DNA of 50,297 nt from Macrostomum lignano (lineage: Eukaryota), in assembly GCA_002269645.1 (NCBI GenBank), contig NIVC01003455.1, forward strand, positions 1 to 50,297, given 5' to 3'. Shown here in pieces: positions 11-42,074 of this stretch. Under the pieces are notes generated by a model. That model searched no databases, had not been told where the DNA came from, and worked only from the letters and a program-made list of their open reading frames with translations. The position numbers and the translations under genes are program-made. Each line of letters begins with the position of its first letter. Position 1 is the stretch's first letter.

Positions 11-300
11 TTTCCCAACATTCGATTCGTCCTCGGCTCAGTCAGTTTCATCCTCAATTTTTGGCGGCGCCGCCTCTATTGTGGACGAATTCCTGTCGGG
101 CTGCTCGTCCTCATCTTTTAGTCATCATAATCACCATCACAGCATCATCATCATCATCATCATCATAGCTCGCCGTCTTCGGCTAGGCCTGACAGCGTAC
201 TGCCAGAAGAGTTGCCATTTTTTGAGCACCTAAACACTTTGTTGAAGCCTACATTATTGCGTCCTAGCCGATCGAACGGCATAATCAGTATCAGCAGCAG
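11..300 (+). CDS. PIAS-like SUMO E3 ligase A, internal exon (linker + start of PINIT); apparent frameshifts near 140 and 286
   Basis: Acceptor TTTCAG at 5-10, donor GTGAGA at 301. Encodes LPEELPFFEHLNTLLKPTLLRPS (from 200), homologous to paralog B LPNELTFFEHVATLLKPTALRPT and to the PIAS 'LPFYD.L.ELIKPT.L' motif. Confidence 0.75.
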
Positions 301-420
301 GTGAGAATTTTTTTTCATTTTAGTTCGGTATTTACGAGTATTAAGTATTTCTTTGAGAGTTTTGCTTAGCGAGTGATAATCTCAGTGTTGCCTGTAGAAT
401 TCAGTAGGTATCTAGAGGAC

Positions 421-1135
421 CCAGATCCCAATGGGAGTTGTGAGGGATAGATCCCAATGGGAGTTGTGAGGGATTGGGATCCCAATGGGAGTTGTGAGGG
501 ATAGATCCCAATGGGAGTTGTGAGGGATAGGGATCCAATGGGAGTTGTGAGGATAGATCCCAATGGGAGTTGTGAGGGATAGGGATCCCAATAGGAGTTG
601 TGAAGGATAGGGATCCCAATGGAAGTTGAGAGAGATAGGGATCCCAATGGGAGTTGAGAGGGATAGGGATCCTAATGGGAGTTGTGAGGGATAGATCCCA
701 ATGGGAGTTGTGAGGGATTGGGATCCCAATGGGAGTTGTGAGGGATAGATCCCAATGGGAGTTGTGAGGGATAGATCCCAATGGGAGTTGTGAGGGATAG
801 GGATCCCAATGGGAGTTGTGAGGGATAGATCCCAATGGGAGTTGTGAGGGATAAGTATCCCAATAGGAGTTGTGAAGGATAGGGATCCAATGGAAGTTGA
901 GAGAGATAGGGATCCCAATGAGAGTTGAGAGGGATAGGGATCCCAATGGGAGTTGAGGATAGGGATCCCAATGGGAGTTGAGGGATAGGGATCCCAATGG
1001 GAGCTGAGTGATAAAGATCCCAATTGGAGTTGAGAGGGATAGGGATCCCAATTGGATTTAAGAGGGATAAGGATCCCAGTGGAAGTTGAGAGGGATAGAT
1101 ATCCCAATGCGAAGTGAGAGGGATAGAGATCCCAA
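421..1135. repeat. 26/28-bp minisatellite (GGGAGTTGTGAGGGATAG[GG]ATCCCAAT) in PIAS-A intron
   Basis: Visible tandem units; accounts for the minus-strand repetitive ORFs at 366-1176. Confidence 0.95.
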
Positions 1136-1278
1136 TGGTATCTGTGAGAATAGTAATCCCACAAGCAAGCATACAAACCTTAAAGATTTAGTATACTTAG
1201 ATTAGGTTTTAACTGTTTGAATTTTGATGCCATACATATAAATAACACAAAATGATAAAGCAATTATTTTGACTTCAG

Positions 1279-1549
1279 GCCCACTGCGATTTAGAGTTCG
1301 GCATGAATCCGCAGCAAGTCAAATCAGTACTATCAATGCGCACTCGAGACTTGGCCTCTGGCCGCACCGAGTACGCCGTACAGGTTTTGATTCGTTGCTT
1401 CCACTCGGAGGCTGGCACGCAGCCAGACGCGTTTCCGCCTGGCGTAAATCTGACCGTGAACAGTCAGCCTGTTCTGGGCCTGCCTGCTCCGCTGCCCTGC
1501 CGGCCCGGATCCGATCCTGTCAGGCCCGGTCGGCCTGTAAATATCTCCG
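1279..1549 (+). CDS. PIAS-like A, PINIT-domain exon
   Basis: CAG|GCC acceptor, G|GTGAGT donor. AHCDLEFGMNPQQVKSVLSMR...VQVLIRCFHSEAGTQPDAFPPGVNLTVNSQ...PVRPGRPVNIS matches the PIAS PINIT pattern (F.LTPQQV...VQVQLRFC....QED.FPP.L.VKVN...RP.RP.NIT). Confidence 0.9.
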
Positions 1550-2061
1550 GTGAGTGACGTAATAGAAATTTGCTGCGACATTTTGACGAAATGTATCGAA
1601 AAAAACTTTATAAAGCGTGATTTTTAGGCGCAGAAAAATAACGCCTTTTCGTGCTAGATATTACCGAAAATTCAAAACGAAGTACTCGGAATCGGGGCAT
1701 CCAAACTTTTTCAATTATCACCTTGAAATTTTACCTAAATTTTTATTCAGACAAATTTGAAAGCTACATGTATTGAACGTATATTTATAGATTATTTTCT
1801 CAGCGTATTTTATCTATATTTCTACTGTCCGTAGTGTAGAGAATTAAATTAGACATGTTCATAGGTAGCTCACTTACCCTTTTCTTTTCAATAGCAACTA
1901 CAATATACAACACGAATGTCAAAGATTGCCTACTTAAGAGTAGCGAGAAATGACTTTTAACCGGTGTGTGTCCATGGGCAGTCAAGACTAGCTGAAGTCA
2001 TCAAGAAGTCATCAAACAACGCCAACCCCCATAGTAACCGCTCCTAACTCTAATCACGCAG

Positions 2062-3358
2062 GTCTCTGCCGCCTCTCTGCCAGCTCCCAGGCGAACAATC
2101 GTATCCGCGTCAGCTGGCTGCACCGACCATCCGGTCCGGGCTACTGCCTCTCCGTGTCCCTCGCTCGCGTCGTATCGTCCAATGACCTCGCCAATCGGCT
2201 ATTGACCTTGCCAGGTCGGGTCCGGCCAGCCAGTCAAACTCAGCGCCAAATTCGTCAGTTACTGCTTGGCAACGGTGACGACGACGAGGACGACGACGAT
2301 GCCATGGTTGCTATGACAACTATAACCGCTTCGCTGCGCTGTCCGTTGTCCTGCGCCAGAATCCAATTGCCCGTTCGATCCGACGATTGTCGTCACGTGC
2401 AGTGCTTCGACGCCCGGACATATCTGTCCATGAACGAGCGACGGGCCACCTGGCGATGCCCCTGCTGCGACCGGCCAGCACCCTACGCCAGTTTGCACGT
2501 CGACGCTCATTTTCAATCGGTGCTAGCCAATGCTCCTAAAAGCGTCGATGTTGTCCGTTTCCTTGACGACGGAACCTGGCAACCTGCTGGGGCCAACGCA
2601 GCATCCTCGTCGACCTCTGCATCGACGGCCGCCTCCGCCTCCACCTATAAAGGCTCATCTTCCGCATTGGGAGGCGCCAATTTTGACAGCGTTGTCATTG
2701 ACGACGATGACGACGATGACAACAGCTACAGCGCAATAGACGAAGCGCCGCCAACATTGAAAAGGCAAAAGCGCAGCGACAGTGTCGACGACTCGCCATC
2801 GACAATTTGCAACGATCTCGACCCGGGCGATGTTATCGTGGTCGATTTGACCGCCGATTCCGATTCCGGCGGCGACGGCAATGGCAGAGATTGCGACGAT
2901 TCAAGCGACAGCCAGTCGGATACGGACACTTACAATAATGGCTACGGTTTGCCTACTTTTCGGGAGCTGTGGGTGTTATTGTCACTCCGGTACAGTCGCC
3001 GTCGCCATCGCCGCCTATTCAACCGTCGTCTCATGGCGGCGGTGCTTCGTCATCGTCGAATTCGTCGTCTTCAGCTGCAGCTGCAGCACCAGTGTCTGTC
3101 AGTAGTACGAGTAGTATCAATGGTAGCAGCCATAGTTTTCCTTTGTCTCAAGACCTGCCAACCTATTTTGGCAGTTATCCTACTTTGCCTATACACTCGT
3201 CGGCGATGCCCCCGCCGCCACCGCCGCCTCCGCCACTCCCAATGGCGGCTCCTTCATCGTCGTTATCAGCTGCTGCAATGTTTCCGTTTGAATTGCCAAC
3301 CAGCTTTCCATCGTTTGATTTCTTTTCGTCGAATAGTGCCCATGATAATATATTTTGA
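2062..3358 (+). CDS. PIAS-like A, terminal exon: PINIT end, SP-RING (zf-MIZ), acidic region with SIM, Ser/Pro-rich tail (frameshift near 2960)
   Basis: Phase-1 acceptor CGCAG at 2057-2061. SLRCPLSCARIQLPVR..CRHVQCFDARTYLSMNE...WRCPCCDR is an SP-RING. VIVVDLTADSD is a SIM. The tail reads naturally in the 2969..3358 frame. Confidence 0.9.
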
Positions 3359-5059
3359 GTTGGAAAAGCAGTTAGCGATGTGTCCCTAACCTTTTGTTTC
3401 TTTTATTGTCTATGCGATTGATTACCTCTATTTCTTTGCGCTTTGCTCTGTTTATTTTATTGGCCAGTTTAATAAAGATTTAAGAAAGTTTTAGACAACA
3501 AAGGATTATTTTTTAGTTTACTACAGTCTAATAGTCTACTTTAATAAAATTTAGTAGTACTAACAATCAGCCTATTGTTAGATTTTATCTGTTTTATCTT
3601 GCCACTTCTTTTACGAGCCTGCTTATCACTCTCTAGGGCCAGGCTGTCTGAACCGTCGATAATTTTATTGCCTTTAAATGGGGTGGTGGGGAGCGCGCGT
3701 GACTTGTTTTGTACTTTTAACTGACTAGCTAATCAGAAACGAGAGATAAAAATAGAATGTAGAGAGGGTGAGAATACAATATTAGATAACGGGTTAATCG
3801 TTCGCGCCGTCTGTCCTTTCTCTACTACCGCTTACCCTATTTTTATTGACCTCGCCAGCACTATCCTGATCAATTAACTGGAGTGGTTAGGCTCTGATTC
3901 AGCCGGGTGGGTGTTTAAAGTGAACTTTTTAAGTAGAGGGAATGAAAAACAAAAGACAGTAGTTGAATATGAGATAATTAAGTGGAGTGAAAGCGAACCG
4001 CCACGTTGTCCAAGACTAATTAAGATCATACTGATAATTAGTCACTTGCGTAGTGTATAGCAAGTGTTATTACTCTTAGCGCTACTGCAAACGCTTAGGT
4101 ACAATTGAATTGCGATGATTTTCTGCCTCTAGCTAGAGTGTACATCGACTTCATTATTGATTGTTGGTTGTTAGTATCAGTAGCTTTCAAAATACTTACT
4201 TTTACTTTTGCTTATGTTTTTCAAAACCGATGACAGATTACTATCTGTCGCTAACTAACTACTTCTAACTTCTTCTTTAGTAGTACTTCTAAATTGGCTT
4301 TTGTAAACTCGGTTTCTCCCTCCGCTTTGTGTTCTGTTGCAATTGCAACTTGCACAGATGATAAATAAACTGTTGAATTGAATCTGGCATCTCTATTCTC
4401 TGTTGTCATTTGCTCGTTGCACCACAATTCCAATTACAATATTTATACCTTTCTATCCGATTAAACGTCTAAAATTCGTATATAGATGCTTTATATCCTC
4501 AAATGTTGTCAAACTAAACTCCTGTGCTACTATAGGTAATTTACTCTGCTTGTTTTCGTTTGAAATGAACCTCTGGCAGGCACCATAATTTTCATTTACC
4601 GAGCTTTTTTGCTGTTATTTTTGTTATATGGCCAACATCAGCTGTATATTATGTTTTTCAATAAGCGCGTTTTCTACTTCAGATTGTTTTCGAATAAAAT
4701 TTCTTTTCACATGTCATGTGTTTAAATTATAAAAATACTTAGGTTCAGCTATTTTAATATCAGATAGAAGCGCCTTCTCTTGCTCGACTGCTCTGCTGCT
4801 AACATTTATATTCAACTCTTGTGAATTTAATAAATTATTATATGCTGCATACTCAGATTGTTTTGTATGTTATTGCTGGCTGGCAACAGTTTTTTGTGTT
4901 AATTTATTTATTTGGTACTACTCTATATTAAAATGTTTAAATCTTCTACGGCAAAAATTTAATGCCAAGTTTATCAAATCTACTTAATACCCGTATTTAG
5001 ACAAGCGCAACTCACTGCAAGGCAACGCCCAGAATAATAGTGTACTCATACTCAGATTT

Positions 5060-5320
5060 CTGCCTATTAACCCATTGAAAATTGTGTCCCAAATGTACGC
5101 ACTCAGTGTCCACCAACCTTGAAATAGTCTGTCTCAAATGTCGGCACCCAATTCCCACCAGCCCCTTGAAAAGTCTGTGCCAAATGTACGCACTTAATGC
5201 CCATCGACCCATTGAAAAGTCTATCCCAAATGTACGCAGTCAATGCCCATCCAACCTTTGAAAAGTCTATCCCAAATATACGCATTCAGTGCCCATCAAA
5301 CCCTAAGAAATTCTGCCTAA
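5060..5320. repeat. Degenerate ~45-bp tandem repeat (TTGAAAAGTCTATCCCAAATGTACGCAC...), about 5-6 units
   Basis: TTGAAA...CCCAAATGTACGCAC recurs at 44-47 bp spacing. Confidence 0.8.
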
Positions 5321-6084
5321 AATGTATGTACTAGGCGCTTTTAACCAATAGACACTGCGATATTCAATGGGTCGTGTTTTACTGCCTAAAATATTTAACT
5401 TTTTAAAGATGAAATATAGTCAAAGCGAAATTCATGTCAGAGTGCAACTGTGAATTGTTACTTATATCAATGTGTTTAAACAGTCATTCAAGGATATCAT
5501 TTGGCTTTTGTCTAACGACTGAAATTTTCAACCAAGTTAGTTGGGTTTCTGTGTGTATGTATCCATACATATGGTTACTTTTGCAGTGTTTTACATTCTA
5601 TTTTTATAGGCAACTCATTGCTTCTTGTTCGTTATTTTTTTTGAAAATCGTCGCTTTTTTTACGGCAAATTTTGTTGGTCCTTACTAAAGCCAACTTGTT
5701 TGCCACTTGTAAACCCTACTGTATTGTGCGCGTGCCCTATGCAGACACTGTCCATATATTGTGTTCTGTCGCTCTAAACACATTGCATGCTCTCTATTGT
5801 TTTCCCAAACTCCCGTCTTTGTGTTTCTGCTTGCTTTGTACAACTTACTATTCCCGAATATGTTTTTTACTTACGAGTAACTCTTACCTATGTAAATAAA
5901 TTTCATACTCTTTTTATTGGATTGTGAATGTCTAACGAAATTTTAAAATGCCGTTCAATTTTAAGTTGAAAAATAGATGCTTATATCGCGTATGGAATTT
6001 TATGCTAATGAAAGAAATCGCTACATTTTTGTCATTGATTTAACACATTTACAAAGTCATGAATATTCTCTAGTTAGTATGTGT

Positions 6085-6720
6085 CCCTAAGTCTTCTATA
6101 GCACTGAGCATGGGTGTCCCTCTGTCTCCCATAGCACTGAACATGGGTGTCCCTCTGTCTCCCATAGCACTGAGCATGGGTGTCCCTGAGTCTCCCATAG
6201 CACTGAGCAGGGGTGTCCCTCTGTCTCCCATAGCACTGAGCATGGGTGTCCCTCTGTCTCCCATAGCACTGAGCAGGGGTGTCCCTCTGTCTCCCATAGC
6301 ACTGAGCATGGGTGTCCCTGAGTCTCCCCATAGCACTGAGCATGGGTGTCCCTGAGTCTCCCCATAGCACTGAGCATGGGTGTCCCTCTGTCTCCCATAG
6401 CACTGAGCAGGGGTGTCCCTGAGTCTCCCCATAGCACTGAGCAGGGGTGTCCCTAAGTCTCCCATAGCACTGAGCAGGGGTGTCCCTTTGTCTCCCATAG
6501 CACTGAGCAGGGGTGTCCCTCTGTCTCCCATAGCACTGAGCAGGGGTGTCCCTCTGTCTCCCATAGCACTGAGCAGGGGTGTCATTCTGTCTCCCATAGC
6601 ACTGAGTAGGGGTGTCCCTAAGTCTCCCATAGCACTGCCACTGAGCAGGGGTGTCCCTGAGTCTCCAATAGCACTGCCACTGAGCAGGGGTGTCCCTGAG
6701 TATTTAATAGCACCAATGCT
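6085..6720. repeat. 33-bp minisatellite (CTGAGCAGGGGTGTCCCTCTGTCTCCCATAGCA)
   Basis: Tandem units; 11-aa periodic ORFs. Confidence 0.95.
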
Positions 6721-6882
6721 TCTCTAAGTTAATTTCATGTAGCATTAGGTAAAATTTTTAATAATGAATATGGTTATTGTCACTATGGATTTAGTACATG
6801 TGCTGCAGTATATTTATATTAATATGTATAATCCCTCTAATCGCCAACCCGCAGAATCAATTCGCTCAATCGCGTATTGCAT

Positions 6883-7291
6883 ATGTCTAAGGCTAGCAGA
6901 CGTGCCAAAAAAAGTACGATAGTATGCCCCTACTGTGTTAGTAATCGGCCACAGAATCAGTTCAAGGGTTGCTTTGACGATTTTTCAATTCACCTGCTAT
7001 CGATTCACCCGGCCAATGCTCACAAACTGGAAACTATTCGTCGTTGGCACCAAGCCAAATTGGTTGATAGTAAACTATGCAAATTTTGCGACAAGTTCGA
7101 ACTGAATCTAATTGCGCATTATCGATCTGCTCATCTAAGTCAGTTTGCCCAACAGAAATCTGTTCTTACTGGAAAACATGCTACTAAAACTGCCCGACTG
7201 AAAGCTGCTCAACGTATTGACGAGCTTCGAGCATATATATTTGATGATAAACCGTTGCCACCGTATCCGCCGAGTAGTGAGGTTACTAATG
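6883..7291 (+). CDS. PIAS-like B, first coding exon with two C2H2/BED-like zinc fingers
   Basis: Acceptor CGCAG at 6850-6854, ATG 6883, phase-1 donor G|GTGAGT at 7292 matching the phase-1 acceptor at 7702. Motifs CPYC-x18-HLLSIH and CKFC-x9-HYRSAH. Confidence 0.7.
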
Positions 7292-7702
7292 GTGAGTTTA
7301 GTTGCTATTTTTTATTATTTATGTGTTTTCTATATATTTCTGCACAAGTAAATTAGTTGACAAAAAATCAGTAATATTAATTCTAGACTGCAGTATTTTT
7401 CTATTTCTACTATAAGTAGAATAGTTAATAAAATCAGTTTTATTAGTTTTATACGTACAGTATTTTATTCTTTCTACTGTAAGTATAGTGTCAAGGAAAT
7501 GCTAATTTTAATCTATCTGTACCTTAATTTATATTATAGATTTTTTATAGATCGAAAATTATCGAACGAAATTTTCGCCTCAAACGAAACCACTTGAGCA
7601 TTTTGCTTTTTGCTTCTAACACACTCAACTCATCTCTATGGTAAACAAACATTAACAATAATAAGTCTAAATAAATTGTCATATAATTGATTGCCTACGC
7701 AG

Positions 7703-8061
7703 GCCCCAACATCCCGTCAACCTCGGCTGTTTCGACAACTACCGCTGGTCTGTCGTTCTCCCAGCAGCAGCAGCGGCCGCCACGGCCAAGCCAGCACAGA
7801 ATCTATATCAACTACGACGAGGATAGCAGCGGCGAAGAGAACGATTGTAGCGTCGTTATGGGCGATAATTTTGCCAACAATAACGGTATTAGCAACAGTT
7901 TGCCTGCCATAGACCCTGCTGTGGCTGCCGCTGCCGACGCACTGCTGCATCCGGCTGTGCTGCCCAATGAGCTGACATTTTTTGAGCACGTGGCCACTTT
8001 GTTGAAACCTACAGCTCTGCGCCCTACACGACTGCACGGCATGCTGCCGTATAGGAAAACT
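7703..8061 (+). CDS. PIAS-like B, exon 2 (low-complexity linker + PINIT start)
   Basis: CGCAG|GC acceptor, ACT|GTGAAT donor. 359 nt converts phase 1 to phase 0. Encodes LPNELTFFEHVATLLKPT. Confidence 0.85.
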
Positions 8062-8164
8062 GTGAATCTGCATTCAAATGATTGCTGCTTACAGTATCCT
8101 TGTTTTCTAATCTCTTATTGTCTTTTGTAACGTGTCTCTTAGCAGCCTTATTGTCTTCTCAATA

Positions 8165-8690
8165 TTTCTCCTCTCCCTTCCCTGTTTCCCTCTCTCTTTC
8201 GCTGTCTCTCCCCTCTCTCTCCCCTGTTTCCCCTCTGTCTCCCCTGTCTCTCCCTCTGTCTCTCCCCTGTCTCCCCCTCTCCCTCCCCTGTCTCCCCTCT
8301 CTCTCCCCTGTCTCTCCCTCTCCCTCCCCTGTCTCCCCTCTCTCTCCCCTGTTTCCCCTCTGTCTCTCCCCTGTCTCCCCTTCTCCCTCCCCTGTCTCCC
8401 CTCTCTCTCCCCTGTCTCTCCCTCTCCCTCCCCTGTCTCCCCTCTCTCTCCTCTGTCTCTCCCCTCTCTCTCTCCCCTGTCTCCCCCTCTCCCTCCCCTC
8501 TCTCCCCTGTCTCTACCCCTCTCTCCCCTCTCTCTCCCCTGTCTCTACCCCTCTCTCCCCTCTCGCTTCTCTGGCTCTCCCTCTCTTTCCCCTGTCTCTC
8601 TCTTGCCTTTCTCCCCTCTCCCTCCCCTTTCTCTTCTCTTTCCTTCCTCTCTCTCACTGTCTCGTCCCTCCTGCCTTCTCCCGGCTATCT
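8165..8690. repeat. CT-rich low-complexity array in PIAS-B intron 2
   Basis: Almost pure pyrimidine CTCCCCTGTCT variants. Confidence 0.95.
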
Positions 8691-8856
8691 CACAACATAG
8701 TTCATCTCAAATTACCAGGCTTTCCCTGTCTTCATTTTGTTATCTTAAGTAGTAAATCTTCTCTACTTAACCTCTCTTTCTCAAATTAATAGGCTTTTAA
8801 TCTCACTATAACCTGAATATAATTTTTAACCCTTAACAATTCTCTTTCCATGTTAG

Positions 8857-9130
8857 GCGTCGTGCCATATGGAGTTCTGCCTCACACAACAGCAGGCGGA
8901 GTCCGTGGCTTTGATGCGCACCAGAGATCCAACCACCGGCCGGTCAGTTAATGGCATGCAAATTCTGTTGCGCTGTTTCAAATCCGAGTCCGGACCGCAG
9001 GCCGATTCGTTTCCGCATTGCGTCAGCTTTTTTGTCAATAATCAGCCGGTACTGGGACTGCCCGACCCGCTGCCTTGCCGGTTTTCCGGCGCCGATCCGA
9101 TTATACCAGGCGCGCCTATCGATATTTCCG
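8857..9130 (+). CDS. PIAS-like B, exon 3 (PINIT)
   Basis: TTAG|GCG acceptor, G|GTAGG donor. ASCHMEFCLTQQQ...MQILLRCFKSESGPQADSFPH...PIDIS; same intron positions as paralog A. Confidence 0.9.
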
Positions 9131-9204
9131 GTAGGCTGGCAGCCCTGCCGACGAATGATTTCTGAATACTTTGCGAACTGAATGGACTGAATCATAGAAT
9201 GCAC

Positions 9205-9445
9205 AGGGGCGTGCGGGGAATCCCCAATCAACCCTAGAGTGTACATTGGTGTCAGAGAATCCCCAGTTGACCATAGCATGTACATTGGCGTGCAGGGAAT
9301 CCCCAATCAACCGTAGAGTGTACATTAGTGTCGGAGAATCCCCAGTCGACCATAGCATGTACATTGGTGTGCAGGGAATCCCCAAGTAACCGTCTACATT
9401 GGCGTGCAGGGAATCCCCAATTAACCGTAGAATGTGCATTAGCGT
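9205..9445. repeat. 39/40-bp minisatellite (79-bp dimer) in PIAS-B intron 3
   Basis: GAATCCCC at 9218, 9257, 9297, 9336, 9376 with alternating unit types. Confidence 0.88.
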
Positions 9446-9496
9446 GCGGGTCCGCAATCTACCGCAGAATAGAACCTTTAACACATTCACCCGCAG

Positions 9497-10380
9497 GTCT
9501 CTGTCGAGTTGGCAATTCTGCTATCAATCGTCTGCGAGTGAGCTGGCTACACCGAATCCTGGGCGCCGGTCACTGCCTGTCAATCACTCTGGCTCGTGTT
9601 GTCACACCCAACGAGCTCACTAAGCGGTTGCTATCCAGTTCAAATAAAGTTCGCTCCGTCAGCGAAACTCTGCAACAGATTCGTCAACTGCTACTTATTG
9701 ACGATAATAGCAACGGAGCGGATGCGGCTGTTGCCATGACAACGCTAACCGCTTCGTTGCGCTGCCCGTTGTCGCGAACCAGAATCGAGCTTCCAGTTCG
9801 CGGCCTTGATTGTCGTCACGTGCAGTGCTTCGACGCCCGGACCTACTTGTCGATGAACGAGCGGAAGTCCACCTGGCGGTGCCCCTGCTGCGACCGGCCC
9901 GCTCCATTTGCCAGTCTTCGCGTCGACGCTCACTTCCAGTCAGTGCTTGCCGACGCCCCTGTCAACGTTGACTCCGTGCGTTTCCTAGACGACGGCACCT
10001 GGCAACCGATTGAAGATTCAACACCGACTGTTGGCAGTTCCGAATCCAGCGTAGCAGCGCCGGTAGGCAAGTCTAGCCTGGTGATTGACAGCATCGCCAT
10101 TCCCGACGATGAAGATAGCAATGTTGAGAAAGAGGGTCCAAGTGTTACGAAAAACAATAATAACAACAATAGCAACAACAACAAGAACAAGCAGTCAAAG
10201 CGGCATGACGCATCAAAGACGCATCATGAACATCAGGCTGTCGCTCCACCAGCGGCTAAGCGAGGCCGCTTAAGTGCGCCCAGCCTTGGCAACAGTCACC
10301 ATCGGCGACGAGCTGCGAGCTCGGTGGAGCAGCTGCAGCAGCATGTGCTAACCGTGGATCTCACTGGCGACTCCGACTAA
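9497..10380 (+). CDS. PIAS-like B, terminal exon (SP-RING + C-terminal SIM)
   Basis: CGCAG|GT phase-1 acceptor. SLRCPLSRTRIELPVRGLDCRHVQCFDARTYLSMNE..WRCPCCDR; ends VLTVDLTGDSD-stop. Spliced CDS is 1926 nt (641 aa) with no frameshift. Confidence 0.92.
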
Positions 10381-11597: not shown

Positions 11598-12773
11598 GTC
11601 TGTCAGCCAGTTCAGTAGATCATGGACCACTAGTCACTACTACAGGTGTCTGTCAGCCAGTTCAGTAGATCATGGACCACTAGTCACTACTACAGGTGTC
11701 TGTCAGCCAGTTCAGTAGATCATGGACCACTAGTCACTACTACAGGTGTCTGTAAGCCAGTTCAGTAGTTCATGGACCACTAGTCACTACTACAGGTGTC
11801 TGTCAGCCAGTTCAGTAGATCATGGACCACTAGTCACTACTACAGGTGTCTGTCAGCCAGTCCAGTAGTTCATGGATCACTAGTCACTACTACAGGTGTC
11901 TGTCAGCCAGTCCAGTAGTTCATGGACCACTAGTCACTACTACAGGTGTCTGTCAGCCAGTCCAGTAGTTCATGGATCACTAGTCACTACTACAGGTGTC
12001 CGTCAGCCAGTCCAGTAGTTCATGGACCACTAGTCACTACTACAGGTGTCTGTCAGCCAGTCCAGTAGTTCATGGACCACTAGTCACTACTACAGGTGTC
12101 TGTCAGCCAGTTCAGTAGTTCATGGACCACTAGTCACTACTACAGGTGTCTGTCAGCCAGTTCAGTAGTTCATGGACCACTAGTCACTACTACAGGTGTC
12201 TGTCAGCCAGTTCAGTAGATCATGGACCACTAGTCACTACTACAGGTGTCTGTCAGCCAGTCCAGTAGTTCATGGATCACTAGTCACTACTACAGGTGTC
12301 TGTCAGCCAGTTCAGTAGATCATGGACCACTAGTCACTACTACAGGTGTCTGTCAGCCAGTTCAGTAGTTCATGGACCACTAGTCACTACTACAGGTGTC
12401 TGTCAGCCAGTTCAGTAGATCATGGATCACTAGTCACTACTACAGGTGTCTGTCAGCCAGTTCAATAGTTCATGGACCACTAGTCACTACTACAGGTGTC
12501 TGTCAGCCAGTTCAGTAGATCATGGACCACTAGTCACTACTACAGGTGTCTGTCAGCCAGTTCAGTAGATCATGGACCACTAGTCACTACTACAGGTGTC
12601 TGTCAGCCAGTCCAGTAGTTCATGGATCACTAGTCACTACTACAGGTGTCTGTCAGCCAGTCCAGTAGTTCATGGACCACTAGTCACTACTACAGGTGTC
12701 TGTCAGCCAGTTCAGTAGATCATGGACTACTAGTCACTACTACAGGTGTCTGTCAGCCAGTCCAGTAGTTCAT
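11598..12773. repeat. 50-bp tandem array, ~23.5 copies, intergenic
   Basis: Unit GTCTGTCAGCCAGTTCAGTAGATCATGGACCACTAGTCACTACTACAGGT, head to tail, no spacers. Confidence 0.97.
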
Positions 12774-13279
12774 GCATCATGGATGCTCTGACTTAATCTG
12801 GACAAGTACCCCATGAGCCTTGATATCTCAGAAATTCCTCAATGAGTCTTTGACATCTCGGCAGTTCAGGTTTGGTAAATCATTGTGGAAGGAAATTGTT
12901 TCACAGCAGCAGCATGCAGCGCTACGTAAGATGCACGATTGAGATGCATAGCAACCAAGAGACAGTCGCGACTGCTGTTAAAACGCTCGCATTAACGGAA
13001 TTGCCAACAAATGCGAGTGAACCCTTTGCAATTATTATCAACGAGCTAGTCAATCGGGATTTTTTTCTAGCTCTAGGCGCTAAAAGCAGTTTGTTTGACG
13101 AGTGATAATCATCTATCTGATTCAATCATCAATGCTTTACACTTGTAATTTCTGCACAGATCTATCTGTGATTTAAAAGCATCAAACAATTAGATAAGAG
13201 CGTTGATTTTTTTATCGACAGAGGGGACGATAATGGAGAAATGGACTGGGTGGTTGGCTGTCTTACCTGCGATAGCTTT

Positions 13280-22420: not shown

Positions 22421-24589
22421 TAGCTAGATGTACATTCAACCCTCTCTATGCTGCGTCATCCCACCTTCATTTTTGTCCTTTTCTCTCTGGCCTGCATGCC
22501 TAGGTACAAGTACAAACCTCCACTCTTGTTTTTCTATCTGCCCCGCACTTCATGTACGCTAGGCCTATTATTAGTGTCCCCTCATTCTAAAATTCAAGAC
22601 AAATATAAGTTTTGTTGCACTAAGCGTGCTGGTGGGCTGGTCCATTTGTGGGTATTGCCTGTGAGAGTTGCCGTAATTGTTTACGCATTATATAGCAAAT
22701 GATTTATTGAGTCAAACTTCTTAACAAGTAATTGTACATGCATTGTTATTCCTTTCAACTTGTGTATAAATGCTAGTCAGATGTTACAGTCGGCATTACA
22801 CAAGGTGGCCCAACTGTGGTTTAACATAATTTTTTTGGACCAAACTGTGCTTCTAAACCCACTATTTAAATATCCAGGGATGGTATGTAGATCACATGCA
22901 AGTGGACATGCCACAATCTTTAAATACTTAGATGCGATTTCGTTGACTAAATGTTAGATTAGAGAGCTGATGGGTAGGAGGCACCAATTGATCTTCATTT
23001 GCAACTGCAAGGCTTTATTTTTTTGCCTCCCCACCACCTGTGTCCAGTGCAACGTCAAGAAGAATGCAGACAGCTTGATCAGCTTCTTCAAAGACTGGTT
23101 GAACTGTGTATGATTGTTTTATAAGTGCTGCCTCATCCAGAATACAGCAGGTCATAATAGCGTACATCAGTTTCAACTTTAAAAACCTGCTGGAGGCGCA
23201 AATTCTCTTCAATTTTTATGGAATTAATGATTTGGCCCTTAATTGGCTTTTTTGACTTGGAACATACAAGTCACTATATCCCATACAGAGCAAGGTTACC
23301 CCAAAAGAGGGATTCAATAACATTCTTGTACTTTATATGTATGTAACTATGGTTTCCAAGTATCAGTTCCAAAAATACGAGTAATATCCTTTTCATATAT
23401 TCTCTTTTATATATGGTAGTTTTACCTATATAAATAATATTCTGATTACAAAAGCATTAAAATTTATAAATGACACCTGCTTATTAAAAACCTGATTAAA
23501 CACTTTGATAAGGCTATTTTTGTAGTGTAGAGAAGCAGACCCACACTAGAACCATATAAAGAAGTAGAGATATAAGTGTGATCTGTCATTGGATTTTTCT
23601 TTCTTTTTCTTTATTCGATTGTATATTTATATAATAAAATCTATACACTAGTTTTGTACTGTCTGTCTGTCTTTGATTTTTTTGACAACCATCAGGCTAT
23701 TTTTTTCAAATTGTAATTATTTAGCAATCATGCATAACTTTTTTGATAAAAAATTCAAATTGAAAGTGGGTAAAATATTTGAAAACAATTTTTTTATGCT
23801 TTCAATTGGCATTGTTTCTAAATTAAATTGTTCAGTTCAACCATTTAGGCCTCTTCCTGGCCTTAGTATGTACATTAACAATAAAGCTAAGAAGTTTTTT
23901 GGCCCCTCATGTGGCAAGTTCACCATTTACCAGTCTAATAGACACACAATAAAGGAGGGGGTAGGGGTTTAAAGCTGGCCTGAAATGCATGCATTGTGCA
24001 TATTTTATTGACCCCCAAAAACTGCTCTGATCTTGTTTGTGTTATTTTACAACACAGGGTAGCACAGTTGCAGATAGTGGCAAGCTAGTAGGCCCAACTA
24101 ATTCAGATTCATTTGGCAAATTGGTATTTAAATTTATACTAATTGGAAATGGGTCAAATATAAAAAAACAATGTTTTCTAATGATTTCATTGTTTGAAGT
24201 CTGAATTTAGGGCTTAGTGCATATTAGGCATATATTTAGTAGTGCACTAGTAAATAATAAATATATAGGATACATTATTATAGTACATTCTAATTTATTT
24301 TATAAATATAGTACATTCTAAATATAGTAAATATAGTAAATTATAGTACTTTCACAGGGTTGTACTATAACTATAATACTAATTAATTAATTTCAGTCTT
24401 AAGTCCAACGCTCTAACTAACCACTAGGCTATGAATTATCAATACCATAAAAATTCAAAAAGTATTTCAAATCTTGTTTGAAGTTATTCTTAAAGTGCAT
24501 GCGAACTAGTTATTCTCATGTATGATAAATCTACTAGAACTTAACAATTGCTGCCTGCAGACATCAGCTGTAATAAAAATTGCGACACC

Positions 24590-25000
24590 ATGCTTCGGCC
24601 TGGCAACAAAAAGAAACGCCGTATCCTGATGCTCGACCAGCTTCCCTCGGTTATTCTCGCTCGAGTATTTTCCTATTTGAACCAGCAGACCCTGCTAGAG
24701 TGCATGCTAGTGTGCAAGTCATGGCACACATTGATATTAAGCGAACCGCAGTGCTGGCGCTCGCTGAGAATTTGCACTAGCGATCTGACCGATGCTTTAG
24801 TTGGACAACTGTGCACCGGAGTCTGTCCGGGACTTGTCAGGTTAGAGATCTACTCAGCTGATTGGCCAGAGCCACCACAGCAGCCAGGGCTGGATCGCAA
24901 TGCTAGGAAAGCGCTTGTTAGGCGCCTGTTCAAGTCTTCGGAATCATTGAAATCGTTCAGTTTAAGACTGAGCTGTTCTAGGCATAGTAATGCTATAAAG
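24590..25000 (+). CDS. F-box/LRR protein (FBXL-type), exon 1 (F-box)
   Basis: LDQLPSVILARVFSYLNQQTLLECMLVCKSWHTLI is an F-box consensus. Basic KKKRR motif precedes it. Donor AAG|GTATGA at 25001. Confidence 0.92.
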
Positions 25001-25104
25001 GTATGATATGTAGAGTTTGATATTCTCATTTTATTAAGTATTGATGCCAAATATCTTCTAGATAGTCTAGGAATTATCTAAACAAATCATTAGCAATCAT
25101 CCAT

Positions 25105-25400
25105 AAATCTCACTAAGAACTTTTAAAAAATCTCAATGAGAATCGACTGAAAATCTCGTTGAGAATCGTCTGAAAACCTCATTGAAAGTCGTCTAGAAAT
25201 CTCAATGAAAATGGTCTGATAATCTCAATGAGAATAATTTAAAAATCTCATTGAGAATCGTCTGATAATCTCAATGAGAATTGTCTGAAAATCTCAGTGA
25301 GAATTGTCTGAAAATCTCAGTGAGAATTGTCTGAAAATCTCAATGAGAATCGTCTTATAAATCTTGCTAAGAAATCGTCTTGAAATCTCACCGACAATGT
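25105..25400. repeat. ~22-bp repeat with palindromic core (AAAATCTCAATGAGAATCGTCTG) in F-box intron 1
   Basis: ATCTCA-N-TGAGA core recurs about 12 times. Confidence 0.85.
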
Positions 25401-25477
25401 CCCTAAATCTCTAGAGAACATTAGACAAATCTTTGGAAGACTGTCTTTAATCGTTTTGAAAATCTTCTACCAAACAG

Positions 25478-25783
25478 ACAAGTCGGTCGGGCAGTGTCGG
25501 TGGCGGCAGCGGCGGCGGCACCAGTGTCGATTGGCTGTCGCCCGACACCATTCTGAGTCAGCTGGCGCGCAAAGGCGGTCGCGCTAGCACGCTGCATTCA
25601 CTGACGCTGCGCGCCGAACGGCTGACAGACTCGGGAGTGAAAAAACTCACCGGCGGTGCCGGGTGCGCGCAGCTGCGGCGGCTGCACCTGACGGCCTGTC
25701 ATCGGCTGACTGACTCGGCCCTGGCTGGCCTGACCGCATCTGCGCCTTTGCTGCACTGCCTGCACATTGTTGACTGTCCGCTG
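25478..25783 (+). CDS. F-box/LRR protein, exon 2 (cysteine-containing LRRs)
   Basis: ACAG|ACA acceptor, CTG|GTGAGC donor, phase 0-0. Encodes LRRLHLTACHRLTDSALAGL. Confidence 0.88.
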
Positions 25784-25859
25784 GTGAGCACCGGGCTGGG
25801 GAGACGCAGCGGTGCTTGTTTCCACTGGTTTTTTATAGTCACATGTTACAGCCTCTTAG

Positions 25860-26870
25860 ATCTTCAGGTTGAGCTGTCATTACTGATTCTCAGTTGCTGA
25901 GCCAATCTCCCAGATCCTCAGTTGCTGAGCCAATCTCCCAGTTCCTTAGTTGCTGGGCCAATCTCCCAGATCCTTAGTTGCTGGGCCAGCCTCCCAGATC
26001 CTCTGTTGCTGTGCCACCAGCCTCCCAGATCCTCAGTTGCTGGGCCACCAGCCTCCCAGATCCTTAGTTGCTGTGCCACCAGCCTTCCAGATCCTCAGTT
26101 GCTGGGCCAGCCTCCCAGATCCTCAGTTGCTGGGCCAGCCTCCCAGATTCTCAGTTGCTGGGCCAGCCTCCCAGATCTATAGTTGCTGGGCCAGCCTCCC
26201 AGATCTATAGTTGCTGAGCCAGCCTCCCAGATCCTCAGTTGCTGGGCCAGCCTCCCAGGTCCTCAGTTGCTGGGCCAGACTCCCAGATCAGTTGCTGTGC
26301 CACCAGCCTCCCAGATCCTCAGTTGCTGGGCCACCAGCCTCCCAGATTCTCAGTTGCTGGGCCAGCCTCCCAGATCTATAGTTGCTGGGCCAGCCTCCCA
26401 GATCTATAGTTGCTGAGCCAGCCTCCCAGATCCTCAGTTGCTGGGCCAGCCTCCCAGGTCCTCAGTTGCTGGGCCAGACTCCCAGATCCTCAGTTGCTGT
26501 GCCACCAGCCTCCCAGATCCTCAGTTGCTGGGCCACCAGCCTCCCAGATCCTTAGTTGCTGTGCCACCAGCCTCCCAGATCCTCAGTTGCTGGGCCACCA
26601 GCCTCCCAGATTCTCAGTTGCTGGGCCAGCCTCCCAGATCTATAGTTGCTGGGCCAGCCTCCCAGATCTATAGTTGCTGAGCCAGCCTCCCAGATCCTCA
26701 GTTGCTGGGCCAGCCTCCCAGATCCTCAGTTGCTGGGCCAGCCTCCCAGATCCTCAGTTGCTGGGCCAGCCTCCCAGATCTTCTGTTGCTGGGCCAGCCT
26801 ACCAGATCCTCAGTTGCTGGGCCACCAGCTTCCCAGATCTTCTGTTGCTGGGCCAGCCTCCCAGCCCCCA
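25860..26870 (+). repeat. 28-bp minisatellite (CCTCCCAGATCCTCAGTTGCTGGGCCAG) in F-box intron 2
   Basis: Tandem units with 31/32-bp variants. Confidence 0.96.
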
Positions 26871-27033
26871 GACTTGCTACGAGTACTAATGCCATCAAAC
26901 TGTCAGATCCTCGAACTACCTGATCCCCAAACTTTCAGATCACAGAACTCACTAAGACTTTCCACGCGCCTCTCATTAGTATCTACAGTGGATGCAACAA
27001 ACACGCACAACCGCCCCCCCCCCGCTCCTCCAG

Positions 27034-27343
27034 ATATCTGAGCGCGGGCTGCAGCGCCTATCCAGTGGCCGCGGCAAAGACGGCGGAAACGCGGCCTGCT
27101 GCCTTCGCGAGCTGACTTTTGCCGGTCAGCACCGGCTGGCGGATCAGGCCAAGGCCGCCCGCGTTATCGGCGACATCGGCAGCTGCCTTGAACGATTGTC
27201 TTTGGACAGCTGCTCGCCGCACTGCACCCTGTCCTGTGATCAGTCCATGCTGGGCGGATTTCAGTGCCTGACCCAGCTGAGACTGACGGCTCTGTGCTTC
27301 ATTGGCGATCCGGGGCTCGCGGTGCTGGCCAAGTGCTGTCCTG
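27034..27343 (+). CDS. F-box/LRR protein, exon 3
   Basis: CCAG|ATA acceptor, G|GTGAGT donor, phase 0-1. Encodes ISERGLQRL...LTQLRLTALCFIGDPGLAVLAKCCP. Confidence 0.88.
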
Positions 27344-27399
27344 GTGAGTCATTAGCGCAGTCACTTTCCTGTGCTGCTGGTTGCTCGGTTATGGGTCTT

Positions 27400-28112
27400 G
27401 GGGATCTGGGAGGCAGTGGCCCAGCAACAGAAGATCTGGGAGGCTGGCCCAGCAACTGAGGATCTGGGAGGCTGGCCCAGCAACTGAGGATCTGAGAGGC
27501 TGGCCCAGCAACTGAGGATCTGGGAGGCTGGCCCAGCAACTGAGGATCTGGGAGGCTGGCCCAGCAACTGAGGATCTGAGAGGCTGGCCCAGCAACTGAG
27601 GATCTGGGAGGCTGGCCCAGCAACTGAGGATCTGGGAGGCTGCCCCAGCAACTGAGGATCTGGGAGGCTGGTGGCACAGCAACTGAGAATCTGGGAGGCT
27701 GGTGGCACAGCAACTGAGAATCTGGGAGGCTGGTGGCACAGCAACTGAGAATCTGCGAGGCTGGTGGCCCAGCAACTGAGAATCTGGGAGGCTGGCCCAG
27801 CAACTGAGGATCTGGGAGGCTGGCCCAGAAGCTGAGAATCTGGGAGGCTGGCCCAGAAGCTGAGGGTCTGGGAGGCTGGCCCAGAAGCTGAGGATCTGGG
27901 AGGCTGGCCCAGAAGCTGAGGGTCTGGGAGGCTGGCCCAGAAGCTGAGGATCTGGGAGGCTGGCCCAGAAGCTGAGGATCTGGGATGCTGGACCAGCAAC
28001 TGAGGATCTGGGAGGCTGGCCCAGCAACTGAGAATCTGGGAAGCTGGACCAGCAACTGAGGATCTGGGAGGCTGGCCCAGAAGCTGAGAATCTGGAAGGC
28101 TGGCCCACTGCA
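27400..28112 (-). repeat. Same 28-bp minisatellite, reverse orientation, in F-box intron 3
   Basis: CTGGGAGGCTGGCCCAGCAACTGAGGAT is the reverse complement of the intron-2 unit. Confidence 0.96.
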
Positions 28113-28159
28113 GCCAATGCGTTACACATTACCATATCCAAATCGCACTGTACCGCAAG

Positions 28160-28803: not shown

Positions 28804-28847
28804 GTGAGAGGTTTATTTATTGATTTAGTTGCACTTTCTTAATGCCG

Positions 28848-30445: not shown

Positions 30446-30489
30446 AATAGCCATACCCCAACCCCCCAAACAACCGCATTTGTGCGCAG

Positions 30490-35855: not shown

Positions 35856-35951
35856 CATAGGCGCACCCTAACCTGAACGATTGCAGCGCATTCGGATTAA
35901 GAGATTATCAGTTCTCTCAACTCTCAGTTGACGGCCCCGAAATTCAACATC

Positions 35952-42069: not shown

Positions 42070-42074
42070 GTAAG

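What the first reader, a model, noticed from the sequence alone, without database searches (positions are those of the whole stretch)
6855..7291. Zinc-finger-PIAS fusion: two C2H2/BED-like fingers replace the SAP domain of a SUMO E3 ligase
Seen: the exon encodes C-x2-C-x18-H-x4-H (ending HLLSIHP, BED-like) and C-x2-C-x9-H-x4-H. Its phase-1 GTGAGT donor matches the phase-1 acceptor of the PIAS-B linker exon, giving an uninterrupted 641-aa ZnF-ZnF-linker-PINIT-SP-RING-SIM protein. No SAP-like exon is visible in 3.4-6.8 kb. Known: canonical PIAS proteins begin with SAP; BED fingers often derive from hAT transposases; in vertebrates KRAB-ZNFs recruit the SUMO E3 TRIM28 to transposons. Inference: exon capture may have produced a one-chain, sequence-targeted SUMO ligase, possibly a transposon-silencing factor analogous to KRAB-ZNF/TRIM28. 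hAT MITEs occur in this same window.
Basis: partly seen in the sequence, partly recalled or inferred. Interest (0 to 1): 0.78.

Follow-up and report, generated by a model that had tools for sequence, protein, structure and literature searches.

The report
PIAS SUMO ligase with zinc-finger head
A flatworm (Macrostomum lignano) gene for a PIAS-type SUMO ligase really does start with an exon encoding two zinc fingers instead of the usual SAP domain; the gene is already annotated but undescribed, and the only relatives of its zinc-finger head are a SETD8-like histone methyltransferase gene and a small ORF beside a KDZ transposase gene.

Summary
Window 6883-7291 encodes C-x2-C-x18-H-x4-H and C-x2-C-x9-H-x4-H. 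The phase-1 GTGAGT donor joins the AG acceptor at 7703, giving a 4-exon, 641-aa ORF with PINIT, SP-RING and a C-terminal SIM-like motif.

The window is Macrostomum lignano contig NIVC01003455.1. The 641-aa product is identical to UniProt A0A1I8J766 and is contained in NCBI PAA51352.1, whose annotation was built from RNA-seq. Two further loci (~98% identical) keep the same structure.

The head is a real conserved module. An exhaustive HMMER search of 1.84 billion proteins found one other family: a M. lignano protein with the same head fused to a SETD8-like SET domain, about 720 bp downstream of a KDZ transposase gene. An unannotated ORF about 1 kb further on is a third member. All eight Cys/His residues are invariant at 28-34% identity, and all three heads are basic.

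- "BED-like" is marginal, and no Pfam family matches.
- "Replaces SAP" is not shown, because three other M. lignano PIAS-type proteins also lack SAP.
- The transposon neighbour is KDZ, not hAT, and mobility was not shown.
- A transposon-silencing role is untested.

Verdict: a new domain-architecture variant of a known enzyme family, already annotated, of moderate interest.

The parts
6852..6882 (+). CAG acceptor (6852-6854) followed by a short 5' UTR. This is the probable spliced-leader trans-splice site and the 5' end of the annotated transcript.
   Evidence: The annotated model starts at 6856, immediately after ...aacccgcag|a. The sequence is identical in the two other loci apart from one base. 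The M. lignano annotation uses mapped SL sites, and the SL ends in ATG. An SL ATG joined at 6855 would be out of frame (12-codon uORF), so initiation at 6883 is inferred.
6883..7291 (+). Coding exon 1 (aa 1-136 plus 1 nt): the zinc-finger head module, ending in phase 1 at donor GTGAGT.
6925..7008 (+). Finger 1: C15-x2-C18-x18-H37-x4-H42.
   Evidence: The four ligands are invariant in ZnF-SET and ORF3. Weak profile match to the ZBED1 BED finger (E=0.017) and ZHX1 C2H2 fingers (E=0.043).
7078..7134 (+). Finger 2: C66-x2-C69-x9-H79-x4-H84.
   Evidence: Ligands plus L65 are invariant across the three family members.
7159..7278 (+). Conserved basic helix (LTGxxAxxxARxxAxxRxxEL) and PLPxYPxSS tail of the module.
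   Evidence: L95, G97, A100, R105, A108, R111, E114, L115 and Y128 are invariant. Module pI is 9.8.
7292..7702 (+). Intron 1 (GTGAGT...CAG).
   Evidence: GT/AG kept in all three loci.
7703..8061 (+). Exon 2: low-complexity linker and start of PINIT (VLPNELTFFEH...).
   Evidence: Similarity to PIAS-A starts at VLPxEL; the exon-end position inferred for PIAS-A from its translated ORF and P0001 matches.
8062..8856 (+). Intron 2, holding a CT-rich minisatellite (8170-8634).
   Evidence: Length is 795 nt versus 599 and 596 nt in the other loci.
8857..9130 (+). Exon 3: PINIT core, ending ...PIDIS (the PINIT-motif equivalent).
9131..9496 (+). Intron 3, holding a 40/79-bp minisatellite (9193-9468).
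9497..10380 (+). Exon 4: end of PINIT, SP-RING (9754-9897, aa 434-481), Asn-rich tail, C-terminal SIM-like VLTVDLTGDSD (10345-10377) and stop.
   Evidence: Pfam zf-MIZ E=1.6e-21. PIAS3 and PIAS2 structure sequences E~1e-46. The SIM is judged by inspection against the PIAS V-[IV]-DLT-acidic motif (own knowledge).
81..3389 (+). Tandem paralogue PIAS-A (BOX15_Mlig018073g1). Its 5' exons are cut off by the contig start. It is 63-65% identical to PIAS-B over PINIT/SP-RING and has no zinc-finger head.
   Evidence: In locus L002 the full PIAS-A gene (1042-6050) begins with a Q-rich exon with no SAP and no ZnF.

Best explanation
Shown:
- Window 6856-10380 is the expressed, four-exon M. lignano gene BOX15_Mlig033988g1 (UniProt A0A1I8J766). 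It is one of three ~98% identical copies in this polyploid genome.
- It encodes a PIAS-family SUMO E3 ligase core (PINIT, SP-RING, C-terminal SIM-like motif).
- Its first coding exon supplies a basic head of about 130 aa, made of two CCHH zinc knuckles, a conserved basic helix and a PLPxYP tail.
- The head belongs to a small domain family with no Pfam model, seen so far only in M. lignano. The family has three members: PIAS-B; a 300-aa protein with the head fused to a SETD8/KMT5A-like SET domain; and a 272-aa ORF with the head plus a low-complexity tail. The last two lie in tandem just downstream of a KDZ-type transposase gene.

Inferred:
- The head is a zinc-dependent targeting module, most likely binding nucleic acid or chromatin. 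It brings the attached enzyme to particular sites: a SUMO ligase in one gene, a lysine methyltransferase in the other.
- It would do for PIAS-B the job that the DNA-binding SAP domain does in canonical PIAS proteins.
- The SUMO-ligase core then modifies chromatin proteins locally. This is the way Drosophila PIAS Su(var)2-10 induces SetDB1-dependent silencing (bioRxiv 10.1101/533091).
- Whether the targets are KDZ elements, other repeats or ordinary genes is unknown.
For: Gene model:
- The product is an exact match to a database protein, and there are three annotated loci with the same exon structure.
- The annotation was built from RNA-seq, a de novo transcriptome and mapped SL sites.
- All GT/AG sites and the ORF are intact in all three copies. 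pN/pS is 0.23-0.35 overall and 0.17-0.28 in exon 1.

Catalytic core: Pfam PINIT and zf-MIZ; PIAS3 and PIAS2 structure sequences at E~1e-46.

Head as a true domain:
- Exhaustive phmmer of aa 1-136 against 1.84e9 representatives gives only PIAS-B itself and P0011 (E=1.2e-10, aa 14-132 against 7-124).
- tblastn finds a third copy at L005:10170-10331 (E=2.9e-4), inside an intact 272-aa ORF that is identical in three loci.
- All 8 Cys/His plus 10 other positions are invariant at 28-34% identity.

Targeting role:
- The module is basic in all three proteins (pI 9.4-9.8, 22-23 K+R).
- It is N-terminal and is its own exon in both enzyme genes.
- It is combined with two different chromatin-modifying catalytic domains: SP-RING, and SET closest to SETD8/KMT5A at E=4e-13.
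- Finger 1 weakly resembles DNA-binding BED and ZHX fingers.

No SAP.
Against: - There are no functional data of any kind.
- No Pfam family matches the head (best is zf-Di19, E=4.8 for PIAS-B and 0.049 for P0011). The BED similarity is marginal (E=0.017).
- AlphaFold2 with a 4-sequence alignment gave an uninformative model (pLDDT 53, all helices), so a zinc-finger fold is not confirmed structurally.
- Finger 2 has an unusually short C-to-H spacer (9 residues).
- CCHH knuckles can equally mediate protein or RNA binding.
- The three PIAS-B copies differ by only 3-5 substitutions of each kind in exon 1, so the selection test has little power.
- SAP is also missing from PIAS-A and two other M. lignano PIAS-type proteins. 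'Takes the place of SAP' is therefore a functional analogy, not a demonstrated replacement.
- No orthologues outside M. lignano were seen, so long-term conservation is untested.
Confidence: 0.55

Rival explanations
1. The head is a protein-protein (substrate- or partner-recruiting) or RNA-binding module rather than a DNA/chromatin reader. It might dock PIAS-B and the SET enzyme onto a shared partner, with the conserved PLPxYP (LPxY) tail as a WW-domain ligand.
For: There is no significant match to any DNA-binding finger family. Conservation extends beyond the fingers into a helix and a PLPxYP motif. The finger spacings are atypical.
Against: The module is strongly basic in all three members. 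The weak matches that exist are to DNA-binding BED and ZHX fingers. Pairing with two chromatin enzymes fits either reading.
Confidence: 0.2
2. The module comes from a transposon and PIAS-B is a domesticated fusion that recognises KDZ-element DNA and deposits SUMO there as host defence. In the mirror case, the element captured a host exon to steer chromatin enzymes for its own benefit.
For: The only relatives, ZnF-SET and ORF3, lie about 0.7 and 2.7 kb downstream of an 808-aa KDZ transposase gene on the same strand, in at least 4 contigs. The gene names Mlig001681g4 and g17 imply many copies of that transcript cluster. A truncated copy of the ZnF-SET exon exists elsewhere (P0012). SET-encoding DNA transposons are cited in PMC12730594, via a Kojima & Jurka Repbase Reports entry in its reference list. 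PIAS-dependent transposon silencing is known in Drosophila (bioRxiv 10.1101/533091).
Against: Mobility is not shown. The three KDZ loci examined are collinear through their flanks (99.4-99.8%), so they look like polyploid or segmental copies rather than independent insertions. No terminal inverted repeats were found. The KDZ protein itself lacks the module. Identity of 28-34% and different intron phases argue against recent capture. The direction of transfer is unknown.
Confidence: 0.15
3. The head is a lineage-specific add-on of little consequence: a young, drifting N-terminal extension of a redundant PIAS duplicate.
For: The family is restricted to M. lignano in a search of 1.84e9 proteins. 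The genome is neopolyploid with many redundant copies. There are too few substitutions to prove constraint.
Against: All eight ligands and the helix motif are conserved between members that have diverged to about 30% identity. The ORF and splice sites are intact in three copies, with pN/pS below 0.3 in exon 1.
Confidence: 0.07
4. The fusion is an annotation artefact. Exon 1 would belong to a separate small gene or an operon neighbour, and PIAS-B would really start at 7703 or later.
For: M. lignano has polycistronic precursors resolved by trans-splicing. I could not inspect junction reads directly, and no spliced transcript contig was retrievable.
Against: Protein entries from two different sources, UniProt A0A1I8... 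(641, 644 and 636 aa) and NCBI PAA... (650, 653 and 645 aa), give the same junction at three loci. The donor is a consensus GTGAGT and the acceptor a CAG, and their phases match. Exon 2 has no ATG-initiated ORF of its own upstream of the PINIT region in that frame.
Confidence: 0.03

Closest known systems
PIAS/Siz family SUMO E3 ligases (human PIAS1-4, Drosophila Su(var)2-10, yeast Siz1/2)
   Same: PINIT domain, SP-RING (zf-MIZ) with all ligands, and a C-terminal V-x-V-DLT-acidic SIM-like motif. Sequence matches the PIAS3 and PIAS2 structures at E~1e-46.
   Different: There is no SAP domain. The N-terminus is instead a two-CCHH-finger basic module encoded by a separate first exon. The linker and C-terminal tail are low-complexity and specific to this lineage.
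Plant SIZ1 (SAP + PHD finger + PINIT + SP-RING) (own knowledge)
   Same: A PIAS-type ligase carrying an extra zinc-binding reader domain N-terminal to PINIT.
   Different: SIZ1 keeps SAP and its extra domain is a PHD finger (C4HC3). Here the fingers are CCHH and SAP is absent.
ZNF451/ZATT (SUMO E3 with C2H2 zinc fingers; PMC8998487, bioRxiv 10.64898/2026.07.14.738426)
   Same: Zinc fingers and SUMO E3 activity are combined in one polypeptide.
   Different: ZNF451 catalyses through tandem SIMs, not an SP-RING (own knowledge), and has about a dozen classical C2H2 fingers C-terminal to the catalytic part. It is not homologous to PIAS-B.
KRAB-ZNF / TRIM28 (KAP1)
   Same: Conceptually, a zinc-finger targeting part coupled to a SUMO-dependent silencing enzyme.
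   Different: It is a two-protein system with classical C2H2 arrays and a KRAB domain. None of these elements is present here, and the resemblance is by analogy only.
BED zinc fingers (ZBED1; Pfam PF02892)
   Same: Finger 1 has BED-type spacing (C-x2-C-x11-18-H-x4-H) and an ...H-L-x3-HP ending. The family profile hits ZBED1 (2ct5_A) at E=0.017.
   Different: There is no Pfam zf-BED hit. Only 6-14 residues precede the CxxC, so the N-terminal aromatic part of BED is missing. Finger 2 and the basic helix have no BED counterpart. No hAT transposase is nearby.
Fusions of chromatin enzymes with transposon-related DNA-binding parts, and SET-encoding DNA transposons (SETMAR, own knowledge; HarbingerS, a Repbase Reports entry seen in the reference list of PMC12730594)
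   Same: The sister gene is head + SETD8-like SET next to a KDZ transposase, so a chromatin enzyme is associated with a DNA-transposon gene.
   Different: In SETMAR the transposase itself is fused to SET. Here the shared piece is a small zinc-finger module that is not part of the transposase, and transposon membership is unproven.

Membership tests
PIAS/Siz SUMO E3 ligases | SP-RING (MIZ) zinc finger with conserved Cys/His ligands | tested here: met
   Pfam PF02891 E=1.6e-21, aa 434-481, covering 2-49 of 50 profile positions. CPLS...C-R-H-V-Q-C...CPCC is visible in the sequence.
PIAS/Siz SUMO E3 ligases | PINIT domain N-terminal to the SP-RING | tested here: met
   Pfam PF14324 E=5.9e-11, aa 226-367. 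PIAS3 4mvt_A E=3.1e-46 over aa 218-521. The motif variant is PIDIS.
PIAS/Siz SUMO E3 ligases | N-terminal SAP domain | tested here: not met
   No PF02037 hit at E<=10 in the 641-aa protein. None in + frames of 3390-6100. It is also absent from PIAS-A, P0003 and P0004. SAP is typical of the family but not universal, so family membership stands on PINIT + SP-RING.
PIAS/Siz SUMO E3 ligases | SUMO-interacting motif followed by an acidic/Ser stretch | tested here: inconclusive
   VLTVDLTGDSD at the C-terminus (PIAS-A has VIVVDLTADSDSG). This is by inspection only.
PIAS/Siz SUMO E3 ligases | Ubc9-dependent SUMO E3 activity | not testable with these tools
   Needs an in vitro SUMOylation assay.
BED zinc finger (PF02892) | Significant match to the BED profile, including the N-terminal aromatic region | tested here: not met
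   No Pfam zf-BED hit at E<=10. Only 6-14 residues precede the CxxC.
BED zinc finger (PF02892) | C-x2-C-x(n)-H-x(3-5)-H signature and similarity to a solved BED finger | tested here: inconclusive
   The spacing fits for finger 1. The family profile against ZBED1 2ct5_A gives E=0.017, 18.5 bits over 32 positions.
Classical C2H2 zinc finger (PF00096) | C-x2-4-C-x12-H-x3-5-H with a profile match | tested here: not met
   No zf-C2H2 family hit. C-to-H spacers are 18, 16 and 11 in finger 1 and 9 in finger 2. There is only a weak ZHX1 match, E=0.043.
hAT-transposase-derived domain | Homology to, or linkage with, a hAT transposase | tested here: not met
   The exhaustive search found only ZnF-SET. 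The transposase gene beside its relatives is KDZ (PF18758), not hAT.
KDZ (Kyakuja-Dileera-Zisupton) transposon passenger gene (for the sister genes ZnF-SET and ORF3) | Location between the element's termini, with copies in different genomic contexts | tested here: inconclusive
   The genes are adjacent to and on the same strand as an intact KDZ ORF. No TIRs were found, and the three loci share their flanks.
New two-CCHH 'head' module family (PIAS-B, ZnF-SET, ORF3) | Eight invariant Cys/His, the LxGxxAxxxxRxxAxxRxxEL helix, basic charge, and N-terminal position | tested here: met

The most novel reading that the evidence does not exclude
M. lignano has evolved a private, transposon-associated zinc-finger DNA-recognition module and attached it to at least two chromatin-writing enzymes: a PIAS SUMO ligase and a SETD8-like methyltransferase carried next to a KDZ transposase. 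PIAS-B would then be a single-chain, sequence-targeted SUMO ligase that recognises the same DNA sites as the element's own proteins and silences, or is exploited by, that transposon family. This would be a one-protein analogue of KRAB-ZNF/TRIM28 or of the piRNA-Su(var)2-10 axis.
Probability: 0.15. Interest if true: 0.75.

Novelty: new variant of a known kind. Interest (0 to 1): 0.48.

Why it matters
PIAS ligases are usually brought to chromatin by SAP or by partner proteins. A PIAS whose own N-terminus is a dedicated zinc-finger module would show that SUMO ligases, like methyltransferases, can gain targeting specificity by domain shuffling.

The same module sits on a SETD8-like enzyme beside a transposase gene. 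That points to an undescribed, lineage-specific domain family linking mobile DNA with chromatin modification.

M. lignano has RNAi and transgenesis (PMC5730564), so the idea can be tested. The caveats are that the family is confined, as far as seen, to one species, and that the gene is already in the databases as a 'hypothetical protein'. The finding is therefore an annotation-level insight rather than a discovery of principle.

Tried and rejected
- The search for homologous proteins with the head and with the family alignment returned nothing useful, only the fragment P0012. It did not even return PIAS-B's own cluster, so I treat its negatives as unreliable. I rely instead on the exhaustive HMMER search.
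I therefore ran no fold search.
- Looking up spliced transcript contigs encoding the exact 641-, 644- and 636-aa proteins found none.
- Supplement and full-text searches for Mlig033988, Mlig032597, Mlig012589, Mlig001681 and Mlig018073 found nothing, so there are no expression data. No paper links M. lignano and PIAS.
- An inverted-repeat search around the KDZ locus found no TIRs. Comparing loci L004, L005 and L006 showed shared flanks, so transposon boundaries could not be defined.
- A test of whether fingers 1 and 2 are an internal duplication (hhalign of sub-alignments) was inconclusive (probability 11%, E=0.0028).
- Simple exon swapping between PIAS-A and PIAS-B, or between PIAS-B and ZnF-SET, was considered. 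The intron phases differ: PIAS-B is phase 1, ZnF-SET is phase 2, and the PIAS-A model is phase 2. It is not supported as a recent event.
- I rejected hAT/BED origin as stated, and 'SAP replacement' as a demonstrated event.
Full report
**What is there.** Translating window 6883-7293 gives an ORF starting MSKASRRAKKSTIVCPYC... It contains C15-x2-C18-x18-H37-x4-H42 and C66-x2-C69-x9-H79-x4-H84. Exon 1 ends at 7291 in phase 1 before GTGAGT. The next exon starts at 7703 after ...cctacgcag and completes the codon. With exons 7703-8061, 8857-9130 and 9497-10380 (all GT/AG) the CDS is 1926 nt, giving 641 aa. Pfam finds PINIT (aa 226-367, E=5.9e-11) and zf-MIZ/SP-RING (aa 434-481, E=1.6e-21), but nothing significant in aa 1-137. 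Residues 218-527 match the PIAS3 and PIAS2 structure sequences at about 1e-46. The C-terminus, VLTVDLTGDSD, looks like the PIAS SIM.

**Origin and status of the gene.** The PIAS core finds only Macrostomum lignano proteins. An exact look-up shows that the 641-aa product is UniProt A0A1I8J766. It sits in a 90% cluster with NCBI PAA51352.1 (BOX15_Mlig033988g1, 650 aa, 'partial') and two further loci, PAA90193.1 and PAA86255.1. PAA51352.1 is annotated at 6856-10380 of contig NIVC01003455.1 (50,297 bp, assembly GCA_002269645.1), which is this window.

The six sequences are 98% identical, share the junction EVTN|G|PNIPS, and all begin with the same head. The Mlig_3_7 annotation was built from RNA-seq, a de novo transcriptome and experimentally mapped trans-splice and poly(A) sites (PMC5730564). 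The exon 1-exon 2 junction is therefore transcript-derived, although I could not view reads myself. Attempts to retrieve spliced contigs failed.

The NCBI model starts directly after a CAG at 6852-6854, which fits SL trans-splicing. The 35-nt SL ends in ATG (PMC8629364). If it were joined at 6855, that ATG would open only a 12-codon out-of-frame uORF. The ATG at 6883 is therefore the probable start, and this is an inference. In the other two loci all splice sites and the ORF are intact. pN/pS is 0.23-0.35 for the whole CDS and 0.17-0.28 for exon 1, but that rests on only 3-5 changes of each kind.

**SAP.** PIAS-B has no SAP hit. The three + frames of 3390-6100 contain no Pfam domain at all, and 6081-6676 is a minisatellite. 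However, the tandem paralogue PIAS-A also lacks SAP. In locus L002 its complete gene (1042-6050, 936 aa) begins with a glutamine-rich exon. Two other M. lignano PIAS-type proteins, P0003 and P0004, lack it as well. PIAS-A has no copy of the head. The statement 'the fingers replace SAP' therefore goes beyond the evidence. The head may have been added to a lineage that had already lost SAP.

**What the head is.** An exhaustive phmmer search of aa 1-136 against 1.84 billion representative proteins returned only PIAS-B itself and one other protein, P0011 (E=1.2e-10, 33% identity over aa 14-132). P0011 is a 300-aa M. lignano protein (BOX15_Mlig001681g4/g17, four identical entries). It carries the same head followed by a SET domain (Pfam E=7.6e-16), which is closest to SETD8/KMT5A (E=4.4e-13).

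tblastn against the fetched loci revealed a third, unannotated member about 1 kb downstream of the P0011 gene (L005:10170-10331, E=2.9e-4). It lies inside an intact 272-aa ORF (L005:10005-10820) that is identical in three loci.

In the three-way alignment all eight Cys/His residues are invariant at 28-34% identity. So are L65, L95, G97, A100, R105, A108, R111, E114, L115 and Y128. This defines two CCHH knuckles followed by a basic helix and, in the two enzyme fusions, a PLPxYPxSS tail. All three modules are basic (pI 9.4-9.8). In both enzyme genes the module is encoded by its own first coding exon, which ends a few residues after the conserved tail. The intron phases differ, however: phase 1 in PIAS-B and phase 2 in ZnF-SET.

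**Family assignment of the fingers.**
- Pfam gives nothing better than zf-Di19, at E=0.049 for P0011 and 4.8 for PIAS-B.
- A profile of the family searched against PDB sequences gives marginal hits of finger 1 to the ZBED1 BED finger (2ct5_A, E=0.017) and to ZHX1 C2H2 fingers (E=0.043).
- The N-terminal part of a BED domain is absent.
- AlphaFold2 with the shallow alignment was uninformative (pLDDT 53).
- An hhalign test for internal duplication of the two fingers was inconclusive.

I therefore call this a C2H2-class module with a BED/ZHX-like first finger. It belongs to no described family.

**Transposon connection.** In at least four contigs the ZnF-SET gene lies about 720 bp downstream of, and on the same strand as, an 808-aa gene matching Pfam KDZ (Kyakuja-Dileera-Zisupton transposase), with weak CxC1 and B-box hits. 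ORF3 follows. A perfect 553-bp direct repeat brackets the ZnF-SET gene, and its first copy includes the last 47 nt of the KDZ CDS. The suffixes g4 and g17 imply many copies of this transcript cluster under the naming rule described in PMC5730564. A truncated copy of the ZnF-SET exon exists in another annotation (P0012).

Mobility is not shown, however. The three loci I could read are collinear through their satellite flanks at 99.4-99.8%, as expected for polyploid or segmental copies. No terminal inverted repeats were found. The reference list of PMC12730594 cites a Repbase Reports description of SET-encoding DNA transposons (HarbingerS). The transposon link is thus real as a neighbourhood, involves KDZ rather than hAT, and is of unknown direction.

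**Mechanism.**
- Shown: an expressed PIAS-type gene with an intact catalytic core and a conserved, basic, two-zinc-knuckle N-terminal module, shared with a SETD8-like enzyme.
- Inferred: the module is a zinc-dependent targeting device, most likely for nucleic acid or chromatin. It positions the SUMO ligase (and, in the sister gene, a lysine methyltransferase). Functionally it would occupy the niche of SAP.
- Precedent: local SUMOylation of chromatin proteins would then recruit silencing factors, as shown for Drosophila Su(var)2-10 (bioRxiv 10.1101/533091).
- Confidence: about 0.55 for the targeting-module reading, and about 0.15 for the specific idea that KDZ elements are the targets.
- Rivals: a protein- or RNA-binding adaptor (0.2), an inconsequential young extension (0.07), and an annotation artefact (0.03).

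**Comparison and novelty.** By PINIT and SP-RING the protein is a member of the PIAS/Siz family. It fails the SAP criterion, which is typical of the family but not defining. Extra zinc domains on PIAS-type ligases are known (the PHD finger in plant SIZ1, own knowledge). A zinc-finger SUMO E3 of a different catalytic class also exists (ZNF451; PMC8998487). I found no description of a CCHH head on a PIAS, nor of this module. The gene is already in GenBank and UniProt as a hypothetical 'SP-RING-type domain-containing protein'. I rate it a new variant of a known kind, with interest about 0.5.

Noticed in passing
window 2900-3389 (PIAS-A 3' end), compared with L002:5600-6050: The PIAS-A copy in this window changes reading frame after ...YNNGYG relative to the L002 copy. 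The annotated 524-aa product (P0002) therefore ends in an Arg-rich tail of about 200 aa that looks like nonsense. The tail seen in L002 (GVIVTPVQSPSPSPP...) lies in another frame (window ORF 2969-3358). This is either a real frameshift in this homeologue or a long-read indel error. The 5' exons of PIAS-A are also cut off by the contig start.
   Followed up: partly
window 424-1138, 6081-6676, 8170-8634, 9193-9468, 11598-12774, 25885-28107, 28848-30453, 33150-33945, 34767-35845, 38386-39246, 40544-41271, 42073-42762, 44110-45209, 47350-49120: The window is packed with minisatellites (periods 5-50 bp, up to 1.8 kb), including inside PIAS-B introns 2 and 3 and just upstream of exon 1. Intron lengths differ strongly between the three homeologous loci (for example intron 3 is 366, 809 and 411 nt).
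   Followed up: partly
L005:7232-7784 and 9065-9617 (also in L004 and L006): A perfect 553-bp direct repeat brackets the ZnF-SET gene. The first copy contains the last 47 nt of the KDZ transposase CDS and its 3' flank. This suggests the ZnF-SET gene was inserted or duplicated into the KDZ 3' region.
   Followed up: no
L005:10005-10820 (identical in L004 and L006): An unannotated, intact 272-aa ORF ('ORF3') carries the same two-finger head plus a Pro/Ser-rich tail. It is the third member of the domain family.
   Followed up: partly
window 7246-7278 (aa 122-132); L005:8343-8375: A conserved D-x-P-L-P-x-Y-P-x-S-S motif ends the head in PIAS-B and ZnF-SET. LPxY resembles a WW-domain ligand.
   Followed up: no
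window 24548-31000, 35928-36992, 41425-47370: Other host genes are present on the + strand: an F-box/LRR protein, an RRM protein with a Gln/Gly-rich tail, and a DOCK-C/D family gene (DOCK_C-D_N and DOCK-C2 domains).
   Followed up: partly
tool behaviour (versus 14, 21): The word-indexed protein search did not return the PIAS-B cluster (P0006), although that cluster is in the collection. It was found by the exact look-up and by the exhaustive HMMER search. Negative results from the indexed search should not be trusted for this gene.
   Followed up: yes
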